Of a stretch of DNA of 64,000 bases, positions 1 to 57,927 are shown piece by piece (the first letter of the stretch is position 1; each line of letters opens with the position of its first letter). Made by a program: the position numbers and the translations under genes. The stretch is taken from positions 1-64,000 of the IMG/VR virus record IMGVR_UViG_3300036846_000743; one strand, given 5' to 3'. The notes beneath the pieces were generated by a model. It saw only the letters and a list, made by a program, of their open reading frames with translations. It was not told the DNA's origin and searched no databases.

Positions 1-363
1 ATCAGCCGCCAGTGCACATGGCAGACAGTCGTCGTCGAGCGTGATGACGACATCGGCCCCATGCTCGAGCACCGCGGCCAGAAAGCCCCAGGTCTTGATG
101 CCCGAGTCGCAGCGGGCCAACCAGCCCGGCAGATCGTGAGAGTCACACGACCGGCTGATCGTACCCCAGTCGTAGCAGGTCAACCCATCCCAGCTGCCTT
201 CGACCCGCGGATCGTCGGGCGTGAACTGCGGACCGCCGCCATCCTGGACCAAGATCGTGACGTCCCAGGGGAACCCCTTCTTGCCATACCAGGCGTCGAT
301 GAACTCGCGGAACTGTTCCTCGCGGTTAGACGCGACGACCACGCCGACCTTACGCTCTTCCAC
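1..363 (-). CDS. RGP/GT75-like (reversibly glycosylated polypeptide, UDP-sugar mutase-like) glycosyltransferase, 3' end outside window
   Basis: Not in the ORF track because it runs off the edge. Manual translation: GTG at 363 with AGGAG RBS, VEERKVGVVVASNREEQF...RCDSGIKTWGFLAAVLEHGADVVITLDDDCLP. The DS-x-x-x-x-GF...I/V-T-L-DDDC pattern resembles RGP-family proteins. Confidence 0.65.
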   Translation of the reverse strand, partial: MEERKVGVVVASNREEQFREFIDAWYGKKGFPWDVTILVQDGGGPQFTPDDPRVEGSWDGLTCYDWGTISRSCDSHDLPGWLARCDSGIKTWGFLAAVLEHGADVVITLDDDCLPCALAAD

Positions 364-20149: not shown

Positions 20150-21019
20150 TCATGGCTCGAAATACTTGGCCAGTTTGTGCAGGTCACGGGCAAGCCGATA
20201 GAAGCCGTAACGCTCGAAGTCACGGGCCCGCTGGCCACTACGACCGAGCACCTCACCAATCTGGTGAAAGGTCATCGGCGGATCGTCGCCCAGACCGTAG
20301 CGCAGCACAAGAGTCGCCGCCCACAGCGGCTTGAGATATTCCAGCGTGTTGTACAGCTTGTTCCCCAGCCACCTGCGCTCGGCGTAGTCCTCGACGGGAG
20401 GAAGATCGGCGACCAGGTTATCGAGCGCGTCCTGGTTCTCATCAGGATCACGCGCGCGTACCTGGAACGCCCGGCGCCCATGTTCCAGGATCTTGATCTG
20501 CCGTTTCTTGAGCCTGAGCGCCGCCGCCACTGTCGTCCAGTGCGGGATATCGCCGAGCGTGATCATGAGCAGCTGCTCAGCTTTATCCCACCTTTTCAGG
20601 GCTTTGCGAACGGCATCAGGCACGGAGACCAGCTGATCATCGAGATGGATGGCCTTGATGACCCGGTTCACGATGTGATAGCGAGCGTAGGTGATAAAGC
20701 GGGCATTGCCGCCGACTATATAGTCAGGTATGGCTTCGAGAAGGCCGAGGTTACCAGCCTGGATCAGGTCCATGACGCGAACCCGGGAATGTCTGCCTTC
20801 CTCACGGCAGCCGCGCGTGTAAGCCCGGTGGAACCAACCGGCGCACCAGATGACATAGCGGAGATGCCGATGAATCAACTCCTGTCTTGCCTCTTCGCAT
20901 CCTTGCTTGGTCCGTATGATCAGTTCCAGTTCTTGGGCAGGTGTCGGCGGATCTAGCCCCAGTTCTCTGATCTGGCGTAGGTAGGTGGAGCGGCCGCGAC
21001 CCGGTATGCGGGCCTTCAT
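20150..21019 (-). CDS. Phage-encoded sigma70-family RNA polymerase sigma factor (regions 1.2, 2, 3, 4; no region 1.1)
   Basis: TYLRQI (1.2), ARQELIHRHLRYV (2.1), DLIQAGNLGLLEAI (2.2), RFITYA (2.3), VLVL-like TLVLRYGL...MTFHQIGEVLG (4). Confidence 0.9.
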   Translation of the reverse strand: MKARIPGRGRSTYLRQIRELGLDPPTPAQELELIIRTKQGCEEARQELIHRHLRYVIWCAGWFHRAYTRGCREEGRHSRVRVMDLIQAGNLGLLEAIPDYIVGGNARFITYARYHIVNRVIKAIHLDDQLVSVPDAVRKALKRWDKAEQLLMITLGDIPHWTTVAAALRLKKRQIKILEHGRRAFQVRARDPDENQDALDNLVADLPPVEDYAERRWLGNKLYNTLEYLKPLWAATLVLRYGLGDDPPMTFHQIGEVLGRSGQRARDFERYGFYRLARDLHKLAKYFEP

Positions 21020-50275: not shown

Positions 50276-51190
50276 TCACCAGCTGCGCAGTCCGGGCATG
50301 GCATAGGTCCAGACCAGCCCGCACATGCAGAAGGTGAGGACGGTCAGCCCGAGCAGCCAGCCGACAGATGCCAGCTGCCGCTTCCATGTGACCGTCCTGA
50401 AGTGGCAGGCATTGGTGATGACGTCCATGATGCTGGCGACCAGCAGGGTGACGACCACCAAGGCGACGGCACACACGACCAGGCTCAAAGCATGGGTATA
50501 TACCCACCAGAAAGCAGCTATGACCGCTCGCCAGTAGAGCATGCCGGCACAAACGACGACGGCAGCCGCCACAAAGGCGGCAGCACCGAGCATGAATTGC
50601 TTAAACCATGAAGGGACCTTGCCCAACCCCAACCATACCTTGAAACCATCGATCTTGGTCCAGAACTTGCCGGCCAAGTTCGGCAGATACAATGGCGGTG
50701 GTGGACCCGGTGGACCCGGTGGAGCCGGTGGAGTCGGTGGAGCCGGTGGGATTGGCGGACCCGGCGACGGACTCGGCGATAGGCCCGGGAAAGCCGCCAC
50801 GGCTGCCGCCATGGCTGCCGCCATAGGATCGACAGCTGGCGGACCCGGAGGGGCTGGAGACGGAGCTGAAGCCGGAGCTGGCGGAGCCGCAGCAGCCGCC
50901 AACGCTAACATAGCCGTCTGGACAATCGCCTTGAGATCGCTGACTTCCTTGGCGAGTGCCTCGATGTCCTCGATCTTGACGGTCCTTTGGTTTGAAGCCG
51001 TCGGCGTTGAGTTCGCTGTCTTAGCTCCTCCTGCCTTCGCCGACGGCTTTGCTCCCGACCCTGCCACAGGTACCTGAACTGGTGCCTGCGCTGGTGCCTG
51101 AGCTGGTATCGGAGCCGGTATTGGAGCAGAATTAGCAGGTTGCCCATTAACGGGCACTGGGGGTGAAGCGGTCTGGGCCGCTGTACTCAT
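50276..51190 (-). CDS. Pro/Ala-rich membrane protein with three C-terminal TM helices
   Basis: Low-complexity Pro tracts, a short coiled coil and a hydrophobic C-terminus; AGGAGG RBS. Confidence 0.7.
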   Translation of the reverse strand: MSTAAQTASPPVPVNGQPANSAPIPAPIPAQAPAQAPVQVPVAGSGAKPSAKAGGAKTANSTPTASNQRTVKIEDIEALAKEVSDLKAIVQTAMLALAAAAAPPAPASAPSPAPPGPPAVDPMAAAMAAAVAAFPGLSPSPSPGPPIPPAPPTPPAPPGPPGPPPPLYLPNLAGKFWTKIDGFKVWLGLGKVPSWFKQFMLGAAAFVAAAVVVCAGMLYWRAVIAAFWWVYTHALSLVVCAVALVVVTLLVASIMDVITNACHFRTVTWKRQLASVGWLLGLTVLTFCMCGLVWTYAMPGLRSW

Positions 51191-51210
51191 GGAAAGAACC
51201 TCCTGATATT

Positions 51211-51240
51211 TGTTGGGGATCTGTTGGGGTTTTGTTGGGG
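51211..51240. repeat. Triple tandem TGTTGGGG (CCCCAACA on minus), period 11
   Basis: TGTTGGGGATC-TGTTGGGGTTT-TGTTGGGG, directly upstream of the RBS of 51190. Confidence 0.8.
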
Positions 51241-51388
51241 ATCAAACAAGGCAATGCACAAGGCCGCCGCCTACTTCAACTCATTCCTCCGCTCCCCCCA
51301 ACAACAAGAGTAGAGAAGGAGGAGCCGGCGGCGGCCCCTGTACGGGGCGTATGTGGGTGGTGATCGGGTTGACTCGAACCGGAGCAGG

Positions 51389-51754
51389 TTACTTCGCTAT
51401 GCCGCCGCCAGGACCTTTCGGTTCCTGCGTATTGACATGAGCGAGCCTGTCCCGCATGTCCTCGAACAGACCTGCGAGCTTATCCACCTGGGAGGTGACA
51501 GCTTCCTTCGAGGTGTGGATGATCTCCGCAGACTTGCGAGCGTCTCCAGCGTTGTCAGCAGCCCGGCTCGCTTCATCCTGGGCTTCCTGAACCAACTTCA
51601 CGATCTTCTCCATGGCCTTCTCGGCCGCATGAGCCTGGCTCTGGGCCGCCCTCGCGGCATCCCAGGCTTCCTGGTTGTAATGCCACTGAACACAGCTGAT
51701 GACCACCATGAGAACGATCATGGCGGCGACGGAATGCTTCTTGACGAAATTCAT
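51389..51754 (-). CDS. Membrane-anchored coiled-coil protein
   Basis: N-terminal TM/signal, then an Ala/Glu-rich helix; AGGAG RBS. Confidence 0.65.
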   Translation of the reverse strand: MNFVKKHSVAAMIVLMVVISCVQWHYNQEAWDAARAAQSQAHAAEKAMEKIVKLVQEAQDEASRAADNAGDARKSAEIIHTSKEAVTSQVDKLAGLFEDMRDRLAHVNTQEPKGPGGGIAK

Positions 51755-51904
51755 CTGCGCATACTCCTAGCTTGGTAGTTGGGGAACGAACACTGACTGG
51801 GGACGTGGACCGACCGAGCGATTGACATTCCCTCCGTCATGCGACGGAAGAAAGGGAACCGGCCGGCCCACGCTTACGGTTGGGGAACTAACAATCGAAC
51901 CTGG

Positions 51905-52207
51905 TCAGGAGCGATACTCTACCAGCCGATGAGCAGGAAGCTGCTCGAGAATATCGGACGGTAGGTATTCGCATTCGGGCAACAGCCCATCCCCGACATC
52001 CGGCGTAGCATCGAGGTCTTGTCCAGTGACCTCGCCGGCACACAGAGAGCAGAGCCACACGGTGAACTCCTCACCCGCGACTACCAGCAACACGACATGA
52101 GTCGCGTCGAGGTCTCCGCACTGCGTACAGGAACAACAGGAACACTCTGGCACACAGTCAACGATCCAGGCGTCGCTGTCGACATCTGGTTGAAGACGTC
52201 CTTTCAT
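51905..52207 (-). CDS. Cys-rich hypothetical protein
   Basis: CSCCSCTQC...CSLC...CEY. Confidence 0.5.
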   Translation of the reverse strand: MKGRLQPDVDSDAWIVDCVPECSCCSCTQCGDLDATHVVLLVVAGEEFTVWLCSLCAGEVTGQDLDATPDVGDGLLPECEYLPSDILEQLPAHRLVEYRS

Positions 52208-52282
52208 TTGCTGGACTCCCTGCTACGATCACCATGCTTCCGGGCACGATGCCAGCGATCCACAACCTATGTAGATCAACGC

Positions 52283-52311
52283 TATATGACAGGAATCTGG
52301 GCGAAATTTAG
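52283..52311 (-). promoter_or_regulatory. Candidate phage promoter CTAAA-N16-GTCATATA
   Basis: Minus strand GCTAAATTTCGCCCAGATTCCTGTCATATA, intergenic, upstream of 52207. Confidence 0.6.
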
Positions 52312-52323
52312 CGCCCAGAAACG

Positions 52324-52367
52324 AAACGGCCCGGCTTGGAGGCAAACCTCCGGGCCGGGCCATTTTC
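52324..52367. terminator. Terminator-like hairpin after the PEP-CTERM gene
   Basis: GGCCCGGC-TTGGAGG-CAAA-CCTCC-G-GGCCGGGCC flanked by A and T runs. Confidence 0.6.
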
Positions 52368-52393
52368 AGCAGGATAACGTGGTAGCGCGTTGC

Positions 52394-53092
52394 TTACGCC
52401 TTGCGGACGGACCTGCGGAAGTACCGTCTGTAGGCGAGCACACCAGTGAGCCCGATGCCCATCAGGGACATCGAGGCAGGCTCAGGCACGGCCTGCTGCG
52501 AGAAACTACCGTTAGCGACGATCGTCGAACCTGGCGTCGCGAACAACCCGGCAAAGCTATTGATCCCCCCACCGAAGGTAGTTCCGGTAAAGGTGAAGTT
52601 GATATCGCCGCCCTTGGCAAACAGCGAGTAGTCAAACCGTGGGTTGTCGTTCTCGATCAGACTGACGATCTTGCCGCTCATATTGAAAAAGTTGGGCAAA
52701 ACGGTCGGGGCAACACCAGTCGTGGCGGTGAACGTCAGCATCGCTTCAGCGCCCGGCACGTCGCCAACGGTCTTGGTATAGGTTGATGGCGACAGCGCCA
52801 ACGAGTAGGTCTCCGAGCCAGTAGGCGTCACCAACAAGGTGATCGGCCCGTTGACCGAGATCGGCTCAGGTGTCAGCAGTGACACGCCGTTGACCGTGTT
52901 CACCTGACTGAACAGATTGGGTATCCGCGCGATCTCGATCGTCGCGGTACCTCCCGAGATCCCCATGTTCGTCAGCTCGACACCGCCGATCGAACCGGAG
53001 TCGCTGAACACCACGGTACCGGCTTGCGCCGATCCCAGGCCGGCGATCGCAGCGACCAAAGCCATGGCAAAACAGAGAGAACGCATCTTCAT
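52394..53092 (-). CDS. PEP-CTERM (exosortase-targeted) cell-surface protein
   Basis: Signal peptide MKMRSLCFAMALVAAIAGLGSAQA; Thr/Ser/Gly-rich body; C-terminal VPEPASMSLMGIGLTGVLAY-RRYFRRSVRKA. Confidence 0.9.
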   Translation of the reverse strand: MKMRSLCFAMALVAAIAGLGSAQAGTVVFSDSGSIGGVELTNMGISGGTATIEIARIPNLFSQVNTVNGVSLLTPEPISVNGPITLLVTPTGSETYSLALSPSTYTKTVGDVPGAEAMLTFTATTGVAPTVLPNFFNMSGKIVSLIENDNPRFDYSLFAKGGDINFTFTGTTFGGGINSFAGLFATPGSTIVANGSFSQQAVPEPASMSLMGIGLTGVLAYRRYFRRSVRKA

Positions 53093-53180
53093 ACTTCCGA
53101 TACTCCATACTAGAGACACGAACAGCGCTGTTCCGTACTCCACGCACGGAACCTGAAGCCCGGGCTATAGGGCTCCATAG

Positions 53181-53209
53181 TATATGACAGGCAGACGGCC
53201 GAAGTTTAG
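53181..53209 (-). promoter_or_regulatory. Candidate phage promoter CTAAA-N16-GTCATATA
   Basis: Minus strand GCTAAACTTCGGCCGTCTGCCTGTCATATA, upstream of the PEP-CTERM gene. Confidence 0.6.
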
Positions 53210-53275
53210 CCCCTTGTCCGCCTATCTGGACGGCCGGCCAGGCTGTTGCTTCTTTCCGACACGTGTGACCGCCGC

Positions 53276-53590
53276 CTAGAAAGTCCGGTCAGTAACTTTG
53301 TTGGCTGCGTTGACGTGCACAACGCGGACCTGCCTGGCCCGCAGGAATTGCTTGAAGCGGATCTTGTCCTGGGGCTGAAGCGCCGCCAGCTCGTTCTTGA
53401 ACGTCCGATATTCGGCCAGAACAGTCCGTTGTTTCTTGGGGCAGCGACCGCAGCCCCGGCCCTGCTTGACCTGAACCAGCCGGGCCAGATGGGGAAACTC
53501 ACTGCGAAAGTCTTCCCGCGCCACCAGCGAGTCGATCAGGCTGTTCTCGATCACGACAACGCCGCGCATGGTCTCTGTACCGGTCGACAT
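53276..53590 (-). CDS. Hypothetical basic protein
   Basis: GGAG RBS before MSTGTE; CGRC motif. Confidence 0.55.
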   Translation of the reverse strand: MSTGTETMRGVVVIENSLIDSLVAREDFRSEFPHLARLVQVKQGRGCGRCPKKQRTVLAEYRTFKNELAALQPQDKIRFKQFLRARQVRVVHVNAANKVTDRTF

Positions 53591-53592
53591 GT

Positions 53593-54081
53593 TCAGCTCT
53601 CCGAGCCAATGGTGATCGGGGGTGCCGTGTTCTGCTGATCCATCACGTTGAGGGTCTCGACCAGCTGATTCACCTCGTACAGGATCGCATTGTACGCATC
53701 GTTGGCGATTGACCGGCTGCGCACGATCAGGTCGACGTAGTCGAGCCGGTACCAGGGCGGGCGCGCGTTCTGGACCGGCCAGTCCTCGGGAAAGTCCTCG
53801 AGATCGGCCGGACTGCAAACACCATCGAACGCCCCCATGTACTCGATGGCTACCGGCGGCTGATCAACGGTACCGGCCTGTACCCTGGTGGGCACAAGCC
53901 GGTAGCGAAAGATCTTGGTCGGCATCTGGACCGCCCCCGTGACGACAAGGGTGAACCGAAAGCCGTCGATCACGTTGGGCACGTACCCTTGCTGGAACGT
54001 GGGAACCAGCGTGATCTGCCGGATCCCGGTGCCGACAATCAGGGTATCCGCGGACTGATCGAGCGACTGCGTGGTGGCCAT
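53593..54081 (-). CDS. Hypothetical protein (possibly virion structural)
   Basis: GGAGG RBS; 162 aa, beta-rich. Confidence 0.65.
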   Translation of the reverse strand: MATTQSLDQSADTLIVGTGIRQITLVPTFQQGYVPNVIDGFRFTLVVTGAVQMPTKIFRYRLVPTRVQAGTVDQPPVAIEYMGAFDGVCSPADLEDFPEDWPVQNARPPWYRLDYVDLIVRSRSIANDAYNAILYEVNQLVETLNVMDQQNTAPPITIGSES

Positions 54082-54126
54082 TTCACATCCTCCCTGCGTG
54101 ACACGTCGGCTGTCAGTCCGGCGAAC

Positions 54127-54582
54127 CTATCTCGGGGTGCGGTTGAAGTCCATGCTATCCGTTGCCCCGCACTCAGGACAGGTATTGTCCGGAAAGCCAA
54201 CCCTGGCCCTGTACGAGCAGTTGCGGCAGCGGATACGAAATTCCCGCGCGTCACCCTCCTCCTTCTGAAACGGCTCGATGTAAGTGACGCCCTGGCGGAC
54301 GAGCTTGTTCAGATAAACCAGCTCATCCAGGCAAACCTCGATGCGATCCATGAGGTCAGGCCCCGCGTGCTTAGGATCGTCCTTGAGCACAGCGTGGATG
54401 TCAACGGCAGACGCCGCGTACAGCTTGTGTACCTGGCGGCGCACGGCAGAACGAAAACTTATATACTCCTGTGTATGCTTTGCATTCTGGGTTGGCATCT
54501 GTACGGCCCTCGTAGTATGGCGATGCCGGGCGCAAAGAGAACGTATGTACTCCTGCATGCCCTCTGTGATCTTCTTTGGCAT
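54127..54582 (-). CDS. Hypothetical protein with a C-terminal zinc ribbon
   Basis: CRNC...CPECG. Confidence 0.55.
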   Translation of the reverse strand: MPKKITEGMQEYIRSLCARHRHTTRAVQMPTQNAKHTQEYISFRSAVRRQVHKLYAASAVDIHAVLKDDPKHAGPDLMDRIEVCLDELVYLNKLVRQGVTYIEPFQKEEGDAREFRIRCRNCSYRARVGFPDNTCPECGATDSMDFNRTPR

Positions 54583-54616
54583 TCGTACCCCCTTCGTAGA
54601 AACGAACGAGCCTGGT

Positions 54617-55030
54617 TCAGTGTTTCAGCTCGAAAGACTCTTCTTCCTCGACGGTCACCGCACGCTTGGTGATCACCTCGTCGTTGCGAATGATGTAGAT
54701 GACAAACTCGTCGCCCTTCTTGCCGGCGATAAAAGCGTCGGGCACCAGGAAGCCCTTCGCCCAGACCAACTTCTTGGTGGCGGATTCCGTCGGAATGTCT
54801 GTGAGCGGTCGGAACGCACCCATCGCGAAGTCAAAGAACATGACGGGCCTGCATCCCTCGTCGGCATCATCCGCCTGGTCGTTCCTCTTTTTCTTCTTCT
54901 TGGGTTTCAGTTCGACTGCGTAAGCATAGATAGCTTTCCTGTCGCTCTTCGGCGCCAGGTAGCTGATCGTGAGCGGTTTGATCACAGCACTCTTCACCCA
55001 TCGCATGCCGACTGCCTCCCGGCTGACCAC
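54617..55030 (-). CDS. Hypothetical protein
   Basis: 137 aa basic ORF. Confidence 0.5.
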   Translation of the reverse strand: MVSREAVGMRWVKSAVIKPLTISYLAPKSDRKAIYAYAVELKPKKKKKRNDQADDADEGCRPVMFFDFAMGAFRPLTDIPTESATKKLVWAKGFLVPDAFIAGKKGDEFVIYIIRNDEVITKRAVTVEEEESFELKH

Positions 55031-55272
55031 GCCATGAAGTAACGGTTGCCACCGTGACCGCCACGGCGATCTGCCAGCTTTTCCTGCTCGAACCGATCCA
55101 GCATCAGCTGGACCTGTTCGAGAACTTGCCTGTGAGGATATGCACGGTATGTCGGACGATCGTGCAGCAAACCGGTAGCTTCTTCAGCGCTCAGCCCGCC
55201 GGCTATGGTCTCGACCAGCAACTCTAACAGGTCAACCTTGAGCAGCTTGAGATCGATCGAAGATGGTTCCAT
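54994..55272 (-). CDS. Hypothetical protein
   Basis: GGAGG RBS before MEPSSIDLK (3' part of the listed ORF 54994..55722). Confidence 0.5.
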   Translation of the reverse strand: MEPSSIDLKLLKVDLLELLVETIAGGLSAEEATGLLHDRPTYRAYPHRQVLEQVQLMLDRFEQEKLADRRGGHGGNRYFMAWSAGRQSACDG

Positions 55273-55289
55273 TCGTACCTCCGATAGTG

Positions 55290-55318
55290 AAAAAAATAGG
55301 CCGCCCCGAGGGGCGGCC
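55290..55318 (-). terminator. Rho-independent terminator
   Basis: Minus strand GGCCGCCCC-TCG-GGGCGGCC-TATTTTTTT. Confidence 0.7.
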
Positions 55319-55961: not shown

Positions 55962-55990
55962 TTTATGACATTTTTCCGGCTGATCTTTAG
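55962..55990 (-). promoter_or_regulatory. Candidate phage promoter CTAAA-N16-GTCATAAA
   Basis: Minus strand CTAAAGATCAGCCGGAAAAATGTCATAAA, just after the collagen gene stop. Confidence 0.55.
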
Positions 55991-56003: not shown

Positions 56004-56924
56004 TCAGGCTTCGTAAGCCTTCGACCAGAATTCCCGGTTCTTCCTGGCGACGTCGGCGGTGAACATCGGGAACCGGGTATCCTGTTTGCCCTCGCGGATG
56101 CCCGAGATGGTCACGACAAAGCGCGTGGGAATGCCGTGCGAAGTGTCGCCAACGTCCAGGAAGATTCGGCCGTTGTCGATCATGACGCCGACGGCACAGG
56201 GCAGATTGGGCGCCACGGCGATTGGCAGAAGTGAGCCCGACACGCAGACATCGAGGAACCGCTGGTCCAGCTGGACCATTACACGTTTCAGCTTCTTGCT
56301 GTTGGGAATATCATAGACATCGAAGAACCTGGCCTCGGGCATCTCGGCACAGAACAGGCCAACGTAGTCATCGTCGGCGTTATTGAGCGGCATGATGGCA
56401 TACTTGTCACCCTGTGCGCCGGTTTTCCCTTGGGTTCCCTGCGGGCCTTGCGCGCCATCAGAACCGTCCTTGCCGTCTGTACCGGCTTTTCCGGGGTATC
56501 CCTGCGGGCCAGGGTAGCCAATCCCGTCGTCGCCTGGAGGGCCTTGAGTGCCTGTGCCAGCGGGACCAGGATCGCCTTTGGGCCCCGCCGGGCCCGGCAC
56601 CGTACTGGCCGGGCCAATCGGGCCAGTCGGGCCGGGGGGACCATGCGGACCGATCGGACCTGGAACACCGACACCACCGATACCTTGGAGACCTTGGGGA
56701 CCCTGGGGACCTTGGGGACCCTGGGGGCCTTGGATACCCTGGATGCCCTGAATTCCGGACGGACCAGTGACCGGGATCGAAAGCCAGGCGTCGCAGTTCA
56801 TGATCGCCTGGGGCGCGTCGGGCACCGTGCAGTCGTTGATGAACGGCTCAATACCGATCGGGTGCAGATCCGGAGGGACCGGGCACTTCGTTGCATCGAA
56901 AATGGGGTCTGGAAAGTTAGGCAT
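56004..56924 (-). CDS. Collagen-like (Gly-X-Y) tail fibre/spike protein
   Basis: About 40 Gly-X-Y triplets with short interruptions (GIQ, GPQ, GPP); C-terminal [16 protein letters not shown] domain. Confidence 0.8.
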
Positions 56925-57927
56925 CGCCCAGGTCCTCGACAATCACTTCGACTGCATCGCCCAGGTCCTCGATGATCGTGCTGGCAGCTGCACAGACGGT
57001 CATGTCGTGCCGATCGAAGTCAACGATCAGGCTCGTGTTGTCGTCGGACGATGTGATCGTGGTGCCCACATCGGCAACCAGCAGAATGACGCTGGCCGTC
57101 AGCCCGTTAATGCCGTAGATGACCTCATCGCAGGCCGGCCCGCCGCTGAGCAGGCTGCTCCCGGGCGGAGGTTGCTCATCGGGCGTGAGTGGCAGCTCGC
57201 CGAGGGGCGCGTCCTCACCGCAAACCACGCCGGCGCCGCCGGCCAGCACCGCCATGAAGGTGATGGAATTGGTTCTGGTATTCTGGCGGATCGAAACGTT
57301 GAAGCCCTCCTTGAACCGCAGATCCCCCACCAGATTGCGTGCATTGATGATGTATTCGAGCGGCGAAGCAGGCAAGCTGCCGCCAGGACAATCATCCGGT
57401 GGTGTTACATGGGTGCGATCTTGATTGGCCAGATTGATCGTCCGGACATAGCTCCGGCTCAGGTTCTGGATCCGTGCCGGCTCGATCTGTGGGCCTGTGG
57501 TGGCCGCCAGCGTACCGTCTGCGGGCATCAAGGCGGCAAGGTTGTCCATTGGGCCGGTGACCAGGAAGCCCTCCCAGAGCGGCGGCTGGGGCGGCGGAGA
57601 GCTTCCCAGAGCCACAGCCGCAACGTAGTTGGTCGCGAACTCAGCATCAGTCAGATCACGACTGAACTTCAGTGCATATCCAACCAGGCCAGGTGCGCTC
57701 GAACGAAAGTCAAACGTGAACGTATTGCCTGCACGCGTGACCTGATGCAGGTATATAACGTCCTTGGTGTCGTCGAATTCGGAGTCGAGCCCCACCAGGC
57801 AGCCGAAGTCGAGCAGCGTATCCAGGGGCAGGCGGAATTCGGCTGGCTTGTCCGATAGCGCGTTCGAGAACGGGATCAGCGGATAGGCCCGTCCTTCGTT
57901 GTCGTTGCAGAATCCCGGCCGCGCCAT
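56917..57927 (-). CDS. Putative tail/baseplate protein, paralog family member
   Basis: N-terminal [10 protein letters not shown]; CGE...C...YGING motif. Confidence 0.6.

What the first reader, a model, noticed from the sequence alone, without database searches (positions are those of the whole stretch)
52394..53209. Phage-encoded PEP-CTERM protein with its own candidate promoter and terminator
Seen: a complete sorting signal (VPEP, TM helix, basic RRYFRR) and a signal peptide, flanked by the CTAAA/GTCATATA motif and a hairpin. Known: PEP-CTERM proteins are processed by host exosortase, are often glycosylated and are linked to EPS/biofilm; no exosortase is present in this window. The tail style recalls Isosphaeraceae proteins (from memory). 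Inference: the phage uses the host exosortase to display a protein, which is rarely reported in phages and points to a planctomycete host.
Basis: partly seen in the sequence, partly recalled or inferred. Interest (0 to 1): 0.7.

Follow-up and report, generated by a model that had tools for sequence, protein, structure and literature searches.

The report
Phage-carried PEP-CTERM surface-protein gene cassette
A complete 226-kb soil phage carries a stand-alone gene for a small secreted beta-barrel protein whose tail is a PEP-CTERM sorting signal, but it carries no exosortase, so the protein probably depends on the host's sorting enzyme to reach the infected cell's surface; phage genes of this kind are almost unreported.

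Summary
Window 52394-53092(-) encodes a 232-aa precursor with three parts: a Sec signal peptide, a confidently modelled beta-barrel of about 177 aa, and a PEP-CTERM tail that passes both curated thresholds.

The gene is genuinely phage-borne.
- The contig is a closed 226-kb virus genome with a large terminase, a tail fibre-like gene and its own sigma factor.
- An independent assembly spans the locus without a difference.
- Three related large phages carry the gene in the same slot.

The CTAAA/GTCATATA motif and the hairpin are also real. The motif is conserved at three orthologous positions in all four phages. Each phage has a strong hairpin directly after the gene.

No exosortase is encoded anywhere in the phage, so dependence on a host exosortase is a sound inference. 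It is untested.

Two points need correcting.
- This is not a one-off. The family recurs in at least five unrelated phage lineages and in bacterial chromosomes, and alleles have been swapped within the conserved slot.
- The planctomycete host is plausible but unproven, and the Isosphaeraceae idea could not be tested.

The function is inferred only: remodelling of the infected cell's surface, such as receptor masking or exclusion. I rate this a new variant of a known kind, of moderate interest.

The parts
53181..53209 (-). Promoter-like motif upstream of the gene. CTAAA (53205-53209) is the -35-like element. A 16-nt gap follows, then GTCATATA (53181-53188), which reads as TGt + CATATA, an extended -10-like element.
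   Evidence: Two matches in the window against 0.00 expected. Conserved without gaps at the orthologous site in L001, L004 and L011.
53093..53180 (-). Leader (5' UTR) of about 80 nt, with GGAG at 53103-53106, 10 nt before the ATG.
   Evidence: Read from the sequence. No Rfam family matches. The leaders of the orthologues are longer and not alike.
53021..53092 (-). Start codon and Sec-type signal peptide (aa 1-24, ending A-Q-A | G).
   Evidence: N-terminus conserved in the family. Helix 2-17 in the model.
52490..53020 (-). Mature domain, aa 25-201: a small all-beta barrel rich in Thr, Ser, Gly and Asn.
   Evidence: AlphaFold2 model with mean pLDDT 92.3 and pTM 0.81. Best solved-structure matches are small soluble beta-barrels at Z 8-9; outer-membrane barrels score Z 6.5-7.5.
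52397..52489 (-). PEP-CTERM sorting tail, aa 202-232: VPEP, hydrophobic helix 206-221, RRYFRR 222-227.
   Evidence: PF07589 26.7 bits (GA 20.7) and TIGR02595 18.8 bits (cut-off 16). A six-frame search of the genome gives 31.2 bits.
52394..52396 (-). Stop codon.
52318..52372 (-). Intrinsic terminator: a GC-rich hairpin (core about 52328-52361) followed by GUUUCGUUUC.
   Evidence: -32.4 kcal/mol, z -5.2, 0 of 200 shuffles as good. Equivalent hairpins follow the gene in L001, L004 and L011.
52283..52311 (-). Second copy of the promoter-like motif. It starts the next transcription unit (100-aa Cys-rich ORF 51905-52207, then a 121-aa membrane coiled-coil ORF 51389-51754).
   Evidence: Conserved downstream of the orthologue in L001, L004 and L011.
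55964..55990 (-). Third, slightly degenerate copy of the motif, directly after the tail-fibre-like gene. It marks the start of the block of small genes that ends at the cassette.
   Evidence: The tail-fibre-like gene is 56004-56942.

Best explanation
This is a self-contained accessory ('moron') cassette in a complete soil phage of about 226 kb. Its order is: lineage-specific promoter, short leader with ribosome-binding site, one ORF, intrinsic terminator.

The ORF makes a 232-aa precursor. The host Sec system exports it and removes the signal peptide. That leaves a small beta-barrel held in the inner membrane by the C-terminal PEP-CTERM helix. The phage encodes no exosortase, so the host's exosortase must recognise and cleave that tail and pass the barrel on to the cell envelope or exopolysaccharide layer.

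The cassette lies just downstream of the tail-fibre genes. Its alleles have been exchanged within that slot, and the same family recurs as a single insert in unrelated phages. The most likely role is therefore to change the surface of the infected cell. Options are masking the receptor or matrix so that further phages or the phage's own progeny do not adsorb, or altering aggregation.

**Shown:** the gene, its three-part architecture, its phage residence, conservation of the regulatory signals, and the absence of a phage exosortase.

**Inferred:** Sec export, exosortase processing, surface location and the biological role.
For: **Architecture**
- PEP-CTERM passes both curated thresholds.
- The signal peptide, VPEP, helix and basic cluster are conserved across 78 homologues.
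- The barrel model is confident, pLDDT 92.3.

**Phage residence**
- The record is a virus rated 100% complete by CheckV, and its ends overlap at 128 of 129 bases.
- It carries TerL (phrog_675, 6e-50), a class II ribonucleotide reductase and a Bro-N/Ant protein, a tail-fibre-like gene and a sigma factor.
- There is no assembly break across the locus.
- The orthologue sits in a collinear slot in L001, L004 and L011.

**Cassette**
- The motif is conserved at 12 sites (4 phages x 3 positions), with nearly invariant C-T-x-A at the CTAAA element and G-T-C-A-T-A-x-A at the GTCATATA element, at fixed spacing.
- All four phages have a hairpin after the gene, z -3.3 to -6.3.
- L014, an unrelated phage, also has a visible inverted repeat followed by a run of T's after its copy (read by eye from the sequence, not folded or scored).

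**Dependence on the host**
- No PF09721 match in the 226 kb.

**Mobility and exchange**
- The family occurs in unrelated phages: between TerL and portal (L009), next to a tape-measure gene (L007), and in a replication module (L014 and the P0060 contig).
- The AU test rejects a single clade for the large-phage copies (p 3.4e-6).

**Background**
- PEP-CTERM and exosortase are enriched in soil bacteria and present in Planctomycetes (PMC1569441).
Against: - No host is identified, so no exosortase partner has been seen.
- No RNA data could be listed, so the promoter and the timing of expression are unverified.
- The motif is a poor match to the sigma-70 consensus, and the scanner called no promoter.
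- The phage has no integrase or ParB. A lysogeny-expressed moron in the lambda lom/bor style is therefore unlikely, and the benefit must arise during lytic infection.
- The barrel matches known folds only at a generic level (Z 9 against a typical background of 7-8).
- Nothing links it to known exclusion or defence families.
- A neighbouring gene has a weak Rz-like spanin match, which leaves a lysis-related role open.
Confidence: 0.65

Rival explanations
1. The barrel is an integral outer-membrane protein, like lambda Lom or Ail. It would insert by the usual outer-membrane pathway, and the PEP-CTERM-like tail would be irrelevant or only a membrane anchor.
For: Eight-stranded outer-membrane barrels are among the structural matches: PagL Z 7.5, OmpA 6.5, NspA 6.5, OprF 6.4. 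Atlas structure rows include OMP_b-brl and PagL clusters. Lambda's lom also lies beside tail-fibre genes (my own knowledge).
Against: Soluble small barrels score higher, at Z 8-9. The tail passes two curated PEP-CTERM models and is conserved across the family. The barrel does not end the protein, so there is no C-terminal outer-membrane insertion signal. Look-alike folds in AlphaFold DB are mostly other PEP-CTERM or VPDSG-CTERM proteins.
Confidence: 0.1
2. The protein is a decoy substrate. Made in bulk during infection, it saturates or blocks the host exosortase. That would stop assembly of the host's own PEP-CTERM proteins and matrix, easing phage release and spread.
For: The phage has two PEP-CTERM ORFs and no exosortase. 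The cassette has its own strong signals.
Against: The roughly 177-aa barrel is well conserved across phage and bacterial copies. A mere decoy tail would not require that. There is no direct evidence either way.
Confidence: 0.1
3. The gene belongs to the lysis or envelope-disruption module. It would act as an outer partner of the neighbouring membrane coiled-coil protein, in the manner of a spanin pair.
For: The ORF at 51389-51754 has an N-terminal membrane helix and a coiled coil, with a weak Rz-like spanin match (phrog_312, E 1.9e-4). A Pro/Ala-rich multi-span membrane ORF follows at 50276-51190.
Against: The spanin match is weak, and no endolysin or holin was recognised nearby. In other phages the family sits between terminase and portal, by a tape-measure gene, or in a replication module. 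It also occurs in plain bacterial contexts. A terminator and a new promoter separate it from the downstream genes.
Confidence: 0.05
4. The gene is host DNA joined to a phage contig by misassembly, or a decaying passenger gene without function.
For: None found.
Against: A single independent contig spans the locus with 0 differences and even depth. Four large phage contigs from different samples carry it in the same slot, with intact signal peptide and tail. The gene's G+C matches each carrier: 0.592 against 0.606 here, 0.678 against 0.682 in L004.
Confidence: 0.02

Closest known systems
PEP-CTERM / exosortase (EpsH, XrtA) protein-sorting system of Gram-negative soil, sediment and biofilm bacteria (Haft et al. 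2006, PMC1569441)
   Same: N-terminal signal peptide plus a C-terminal Pro-Glu-Pro motif, hydrophobic helix and Arg-rich end. A small Thr/Ser/Gly-rich mature domain. Soil origin. The phyla involved include Planctomycetes.
   Different: The gene is in a phage genome that has no exosortase. Substrate and enzyme would therefore come from different genomes. The paper does not contain the word 'phage'.
PepA, the flocculation-associated PEP-CTERM protein of Zoogloea (NCBIfam NF033554)
   Same: Best NCBIfam match. Similar size, and the alignment runs beyond the tail (aa 108-240 of the 249-aa reading).
   Different: 30.8 bits against a cut-off of 80, so it is not a member. Most of the score comes from the tail.
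Phage morons that use host envelope-sorting pathways: lambda lom and bor, and T5 Llp lipoprotein (my own knowledge, not tested here)
   Same: A single accessory gene with its own promoter and terminator, placed near tail-fibre or receptor-binding genes. It encodes an exported envelope protein that relies on a host sorting machine. For Llp the function is receptor masking during lytic growth.
   Different: The sorting signal is different: PEP-CTERM rather than a lipobox or an outer-membrane barrel signal. There is no sequence similarity. No function has been shown.
Small soluble eight-stranded beta-barrels: pyocyanin demethylase PodA (5k21), DUF3224 proteins (2q03, 2ooj), allene oxide cyclase and dirigent proteins, bacterial Diels-Alderases
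   Same: Best structural matches, Z 7-9 over about 115-129 residues.
   Different: Sequence identity is 3-14%. The Z scores are barely above what unrelated models reach. No catalytic residues were compared. This is a shared fold at most.
PEP-CTERM-domain protein (HOG10) of the IME1 virus-like elements of Dehalococcoides (bioRxiv 10.64898/2026.09.15.751708)
   Same: The only text I found that notes a PEP-CTERM domain in a virus-like mobile element.
   Different: A different kind of element (small, integrative, filamentous or budding-virus-like) and a different host phylum. It is mentioned there in one sentence. Homology to this family was not tested.

Membership tests
PEP-CTERM sorting domain (TIGR02595 / PF07589) | The HMM score reaches the curated threshold. 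| tested here: met
   PF07589 26.7 bits against 20.7. TIGR02595 18.8 bits against 16. 31.2 bits in the six-frame genome search.
PEP-CTERM sorting domain (TIGR02595 / PF07589) | Lies at the extreme C-terminus, in the order Pro-Glu-Pro, hydrophobic helix, basic cluster. | tested here: met
   VPEP 202-205, hydrophobic 206-221, RRYFRR 222-227 of 232 aa. Helix 206-231 in the model.
PEP-CTERM sorting domain (TIGR02595 / PF07589) | An N-terminal signal peptide, so that the mature domain is exported. | tested here: met
   M-K-M-R, then a hydrophobic stretch, then A-Q-A|G; conserved in the family. No dedicated signal-peptide predictor was available.
PEP-CTERM sorting domain (TIGR02595 / PF07589) | An exosortase is encoded in the same organism. 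| not testable with these tools
   None in the phage. The host is unknown. Species-genome scans found no relative, and relatives cannot be drawn for a virus record.
PEP-CTERM sorting domain (TIGR02595 / PF07589) | The tail is cleaved and the protein transferred by exosortase. | not testable with these tools
   Needs an experiment.
floc_PepA (NF033554) | Score of at least 80 bits over the full-length model. | tested here: not met
   30.8 bits, covering only profile positions 129-258 of 261.
Phage moron (autonomous accessory cassette) | Own promoter and own terminator flank a single gene. | tested here: inconclusive
   The conserved promoter-like motif and the terminator hairpin flank the gene in four phages. 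No transcript data exist.
Phage moron (autonomous accessory cassette) | Present or absent, or exchanged, independently of the surrounding phage backbone. | tested here: met
   It is the only shared gene between G000 and L007, L008, L009 and L014. Alleles in the same slot are not one clade (AU p 3.4e-6).
Allene-oxide-cyclase-like / DUF3224 / PodA beta-barrel fold | Structural superposition clearly above background. | tested here: inconclusive
   Best Z 9.0 and 8.9, against a typical background best of 7-8. Foldseek against the PDB found nothing at E <= 0.001.
Known anti-phage defence or exclusion proteins (PADLOC) and known phage protein families (PHROGs v4) | Any profile match. | tested here: not met
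   No PADLOC family. No PHROG. No tblastn match in 50,697 deposited phage genomes.

The most novel reading that the evidence does not exclude
Soil phages of several unrelated lineages carry and exchange a dedicated family of exosortase substrates as plug-in cassettes. They would hijack the host's PEP-CTERM/exosortase pathway to re-dress the infected cell's surface. This would be the first viral clients of the exosortase system and a new route of phage-driven surface or matrix remodelling, possibly superinfection exclusion, in planctomycete-like soil bacteria.
Probability: 0.45. Interest if true: 0.6.

Novelty: new variant of a known kind. Interest (0 to 1): 0.5.

Why it matters
Where PEP-CTERM proteins end up, and what exosortase attaches them to, is still poorly understood. 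A compact, well-folded, phage-borne substrate with clear signals would be a convenient probe for that pathway.

It would also extend a known pattern. Phage accessory genes already ride on host lipoprotein and outer-membrane sorting. This would add a third sorting system, in soil bacteria whose phages are barely studied.

The conserved promoter motif gives a handle on transcription in this group of large phages, which also encode their own sigma factor.

The practical stakes are modest. There is no sign of toxin, resistance or pathogen relevance.

Tried and rejected
**Host taxon**
- Three attempts to find relatives in the 185,579-species genome collection failed. Two scans found no relative.
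- Relatives cannot be drawn for a virus record.
- A taxon name is not accepted as a search scope.
- The MAG behind L009 is not held.
- Cluster look-ups gave no accession numbers or organism names; the only name returned was 'PEP-CTERM motif' for two JGI entries.
- An Atlas search with a neighbour of the bacterial homologue gave no usable taxon.
- AlphaFold DB organism names were masked.

**Expression**
- No RNA run could be listed.
- No Rfam family matches the leader or flanks.
- The sigma-70 scanner found no promoter, and it missed the terminator.

**Function**
- No PHROG, PADLOC or PDB-sequence match.
- Foldseek against the PDB and against viral models gave nothing significant.

**Motif**
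- Relaxing the motif by one mismatch per half gives chance-level counts: 21 found, against 9-24 in Markov controls. Only the strict sites and the orthologously conserved sites are claimed.

**Ideas rejected**
- Chimera: rejected.
- Membership of floc_PepA: rejected.
- Lysogeny-expressed moron: downgraded, because no integrase or ParB was found.

Full report
**1. What is in the sequence**

The minus strand of window 52394-53143 holds an open frame. Its real start is the ATG at 53092, which gives 232 aa. Every homologue begins at the equivalent M-K-x-R, and a GGAG lies 10 nt upstream.

The product has three parts:
- a Sec-type signal peptide, aa 1-24, ending A-Q-A|G;
- a mature domain, aa 25-201, rich in Thr, Ser, Gly and Asn;
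- a C-terminal tail: VPEP (202-205), a hydrophobic helix (206-221) and RRYFRR (222-227).

The tail passes the curated thresholds of both models of the PEP-CTERM sorting signal. PF07589 scores 26.7 bits against 20.7, and TIGR02595 scores 18.8 bits against 16. The best full-length NCBIfam match, the flocculation protein PepA, reaches only 30.8 bits against a cut-off of 80. The protein is therefore not a member of that family.

**2. Fold**

I built an AlphaFold2 model from 78 homologues. It is confident, with mean pLDDT 92.3 and pTM 0.81. It shows an N-terminal helix, an all-beta barrel over residues 25-201, and a C-terminal helix.

- Against solved structures, the best matches are small soluble eight-stranded barrels at Z 7-9: PodA, a PloI4 Diels-Alderase, DUF3224 proteins, and allene oxide cyclase and dirigent proteins.
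- Outer-membrane barrels score Z 6.5-7.5 (PagL, OmpA, NspA).
- These values are close to what unrelated models reach, so they name a fold class and not a function.
- In AlphaFold DB the look-alikes are mostly other PEP-CTERM or VPDSG-CTERM proteins, at TM about 0.45-0.5.
- Profile search of PDB sequences, Foldseek against the PDB and Foldseek against viral models gave nothing significant.

**3. Is it really a phage gene?**

The window is the first 64 kb of a single 226,073-bp contig. The record is a virus rated 100% complete by CheckV. Its two ends overlap over 129 bases with one mismatch, so the assembly closes on itself.

The window encodes:
- a large terminase (phrog_675, 6e-50), a class II ribonucleotide reductase and a Bro-N/Ant protein;
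- a tail-fibre-like protein at 56004-56942;
- a sigma-70-family factor at 20150-21019.

My rough gene call puts 198 of 204 genes on the minus strand.

- A Logan contig of 12.4 kb from a soil-metagenome run spans 50300-55300 with no difference and even depth. That run may be the source sample, so it is a different assembler rather than independent data.
- Three other large viral contigs carry the orthologue in the same collinear slot: L001 (231 kb), L004 (246 kb) and L011 (141 kb). L001 and L004 share 18-19 neighbouring genes with the window, and L011 shares 8 on the 12.7 kb held.
- The gene's G+C equals that of each carrier.

**4. The flanking signals**

CTAAA-N16-GTCATATA occurs at 53181-53209 and at 52283-52311, both on the gene's strand. 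Shuffles give 0.00 expected. There is only one further strict copy in the genome, at 119557(+).

A slightly degenerate third copy sits at 55964-55990, directly after the tail-fibre-like gene.

All three positions carry the motif in all four phages. The twelve sites align without gaps. The CTAAA element is nearly invariant at C-T-x-A and the GTCATATA element at G-T-C-A-T-A-x-A, and the spacing between the two is fixed. The unrelated phages that carry the family lack the motif.

The geometry is that of a -35-like element, a 17-nt spacer and a TGn-extended -10-like hexamer. It is a poor match to the sigma-70 consensus, and the scanner did not call it. Either the host's sigma or the phage's own sigma could read it. 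I could not decide which.

Relaxing the motif gives chance-level counts, so this is a small promoter class.

Downstream of the stop codon, each of the four phages has a strong GC-rich hairpin: -32 to -35 kcal/mol, z -3.3 to -6.3, with 0 of 200 shuffles as good. In three of the four a U-rich run follows.

The unit is therefore promoter, leader, ORF, terminator, and it is followed at once by the next promoter.

**5. Relatives**

A search of 5.8 billion proteins gave 79 hits, nearly all 220-240 aa with the same architecture. A profile search of 1.84 billion cluster representatives gave 411 at E <= 1e-3, 108 at <= 1e-10 and 31 at <= 1e-30. None is in deposited phage genomes or in PHROGs.

Where the context could be read, it splits as follows.

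Phage contexts:
- the four large phages;
- a 23-kb contig of an NCBI MAG, with the gene between terminase and portal and an integrase nearby (L009);
- a viral contig with the gene next to a tape-measure gene (L007);
- two further viral contigs (L008 and L013 are the same contig; L012);
- a 77-kb phage-like contig;
- a 47%-GC phage lineage with the gene in a fixed slot of its replication module, between a DUF6065 gene and an SbcC-like gene (L014 and the P0060 contig).

Bacterial contexts:
- a 1.76-Mb contig, where the gene lies among PSCyt1/PSCyt2/PSD1, DUF1501, Ser/Thr kinase and Sigma70_ECF genes (L003);
- a contig with MreB and adenylate kinase;
- IS-rich and integrase-rich islands;
- a tandem triplet.

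In the maximum-likelihood tree, phage and bacterial copies interleave. The copy of L004 is not sister to those of G000 and L001, although it occupies the same slot. The AU test rejects a single clade (lnL difference 97.7, p 3.4e-6). The slot is therefore conserved while its allele has been replaced.

**6. Exosortase and host**

No exosortase (PF09721) is found anywhere in the phage. A second ORF with a PEP-CTERM tail exists at about 128.7-129.2 kb.

Evidence on the host phylum is limited to four items:
- the neighbours of L003, which by my knowledge of those Pfam families are typical of Planctomycetota;
- ESM Atlas labels. By language-model features (a lead, not shown homology), the nearest clusters are labelled Planctomycetota, Acidobacteriota, and a 171-member PEP-CTERM cluster that is 91% viral;
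- the soil origin;
- the known presence of PEP-CTERM and exosortase in Planctomycetes (PMC1569441; PMC7293339).

This makes a planctomycete host plausible, roughly even odds. It is not shown. Carriers of the family range from 47% to 68% G+C, which suggests more than one host group. The Isosphaeraceae suggestion could not be tested.

**7. Mechanism**

Shown:
- a conserved, autonomous cassette in a lytic-looking large phage, with no integrase and no ParB;
- a precursor with export and PEP-CTERM signals;
- no phage exosortase.

Inferred:
- the host Sec system exports the precursor;
- the host exosortase cleaves at the PEP motif and hands the barrel to the envelope or exopolysaccharide layer;
- the phage benefits from a changed cell surface.

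Three features point to the last step: the position just after the tail-fibre block, the allele turnover, and the recurrence as a single insert in unrelated phages. All three are typical of genes at the phage-receptor interface, such as T5 Llp and lambda lom (my own knowledge). I therefore favour receptor or matrix masking, or exclusion, over the rivals: outer-membrane barrel, exosortase decoy and lysis partner. That step is weakly supported.

**8. Novelty**

PEP-CTERM proteins and phage morons are both known. A phage-borne exosortase substrate is essentially absent from the literature I could search:
- 30 papers mention both 'PEP-CTERM' and 'phage', and 7 mention both 'exosortase' and 'prophage';
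- I read the 20 listed titles and abstract openings and opened two of those papers. The one relevant passage I found is a single sentence in a 2026 preprint on Dehalococcoides elements;
- I judged the seven 'exosortase' plus 'prophage' papers by title and abstract opening only, and none is about a phage-borne substrate.

The metagenomic data show that the phenomenon is recurrent rather than unique. I rate it a new variant of a known kind, with an interest score of 0.5.

Noticed in passing
G000 contig about 128696-129190(-), = L006 1480-1974(-) (outside the window): A second PEP-CTERM ORF in the same phage: 164 aa, PF07589 28.2 bits, with a Gly6-VPEP-helix-RRIHRLWG tail. Its open frame has no N-terminal signal peptide, which does not fit the usual topology. 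The ORF just upstream (L006 2015-2785) has a signal-like start but lies in another frame.
   Followed up: partly
window 20150-21019(-): A phage-encoded sigma-70-family factor: Sigma70_r2 25.8 bits, region 4 22.9 bits, phrog_351 2e-16. It is a candidate reader of the conserved CTAAA/GTCATATA promoters.
   Followed up: partly
G000 contig 119557-119585(+) (outside the window): The third strict copy of the motif points along the rare + strand, in a gap between minus-strand genes. The first ORF after it is a hydrophobic peptide of about 32 aa. It may be a small membrane peptide or a non-coding or antisense transcript.
   Followed up: no
window 51389-51754(-) and 50276-51190(-): Downstream neighbours: a 121-aa protein with an N-terminal membrane helix and a coiled coil (weak Rz-like spanin match, E 1.9e-4), and a 304-aa Pro/Ala-rich protein with several C-terminal membrane spans. 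They may be an envelope or lysis module. No endolysin was recognised nearby.
   Followed up: partly
L004 10001-10702, compared with window 52394-53092 and L001 10001-10696: The same slot, promoter and terminator positions hold alleles from different subclades of the family (AU test p 3.4e-6). The cargo has been replaced inside a conserved cassette frame.
   Followed up: yes
window 1-129 and G000 contig 225945-226073: The contig ends repeat at 128 of 129 bases, so the genome closes on itself, although the source database lists it as linear.
   Followed up: yes
whole G000 contig: My rough gene call puts about 198 of 204 genes on the minus strand, an extreme one-strand arrangement. No tRNA gene is found in the window, and no tyrosine integrase or ParB in the genome.
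   Followed up: partly
window 51966-52361: A second soil metagenome (run X2, 2017) holds a 427-nt contig about 95% identical to 51966-52312. That contig contains the terminator hairpin in flipped orientation, probably an assembler artefact at the palindrome. It shows a close relative of this phage in another soil.
   Followed up: no
L014 9857-10567 and the 23.5-kb contig of P0060: An unrelated phage lineage of about 47% G+C carries the family in a fixed slot of its replication module (UDG, RecA-like, glycosyltransferase, metallopeptidase, DUF6065 | gene | SbcC-like, CsrA). The gene's G+C (0.536) stands above its flanks (0.465).
   Followed up: partly
10,976-bp JGI contig carrying P0016, P0018 and P0019 (no DNA held): Three paralogues of the family lie in tandem about 1 kb apart, next to a CHRD-domain gene. 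This is a sign of local amplification in a presumably bacterial genome.
   Followed up: no
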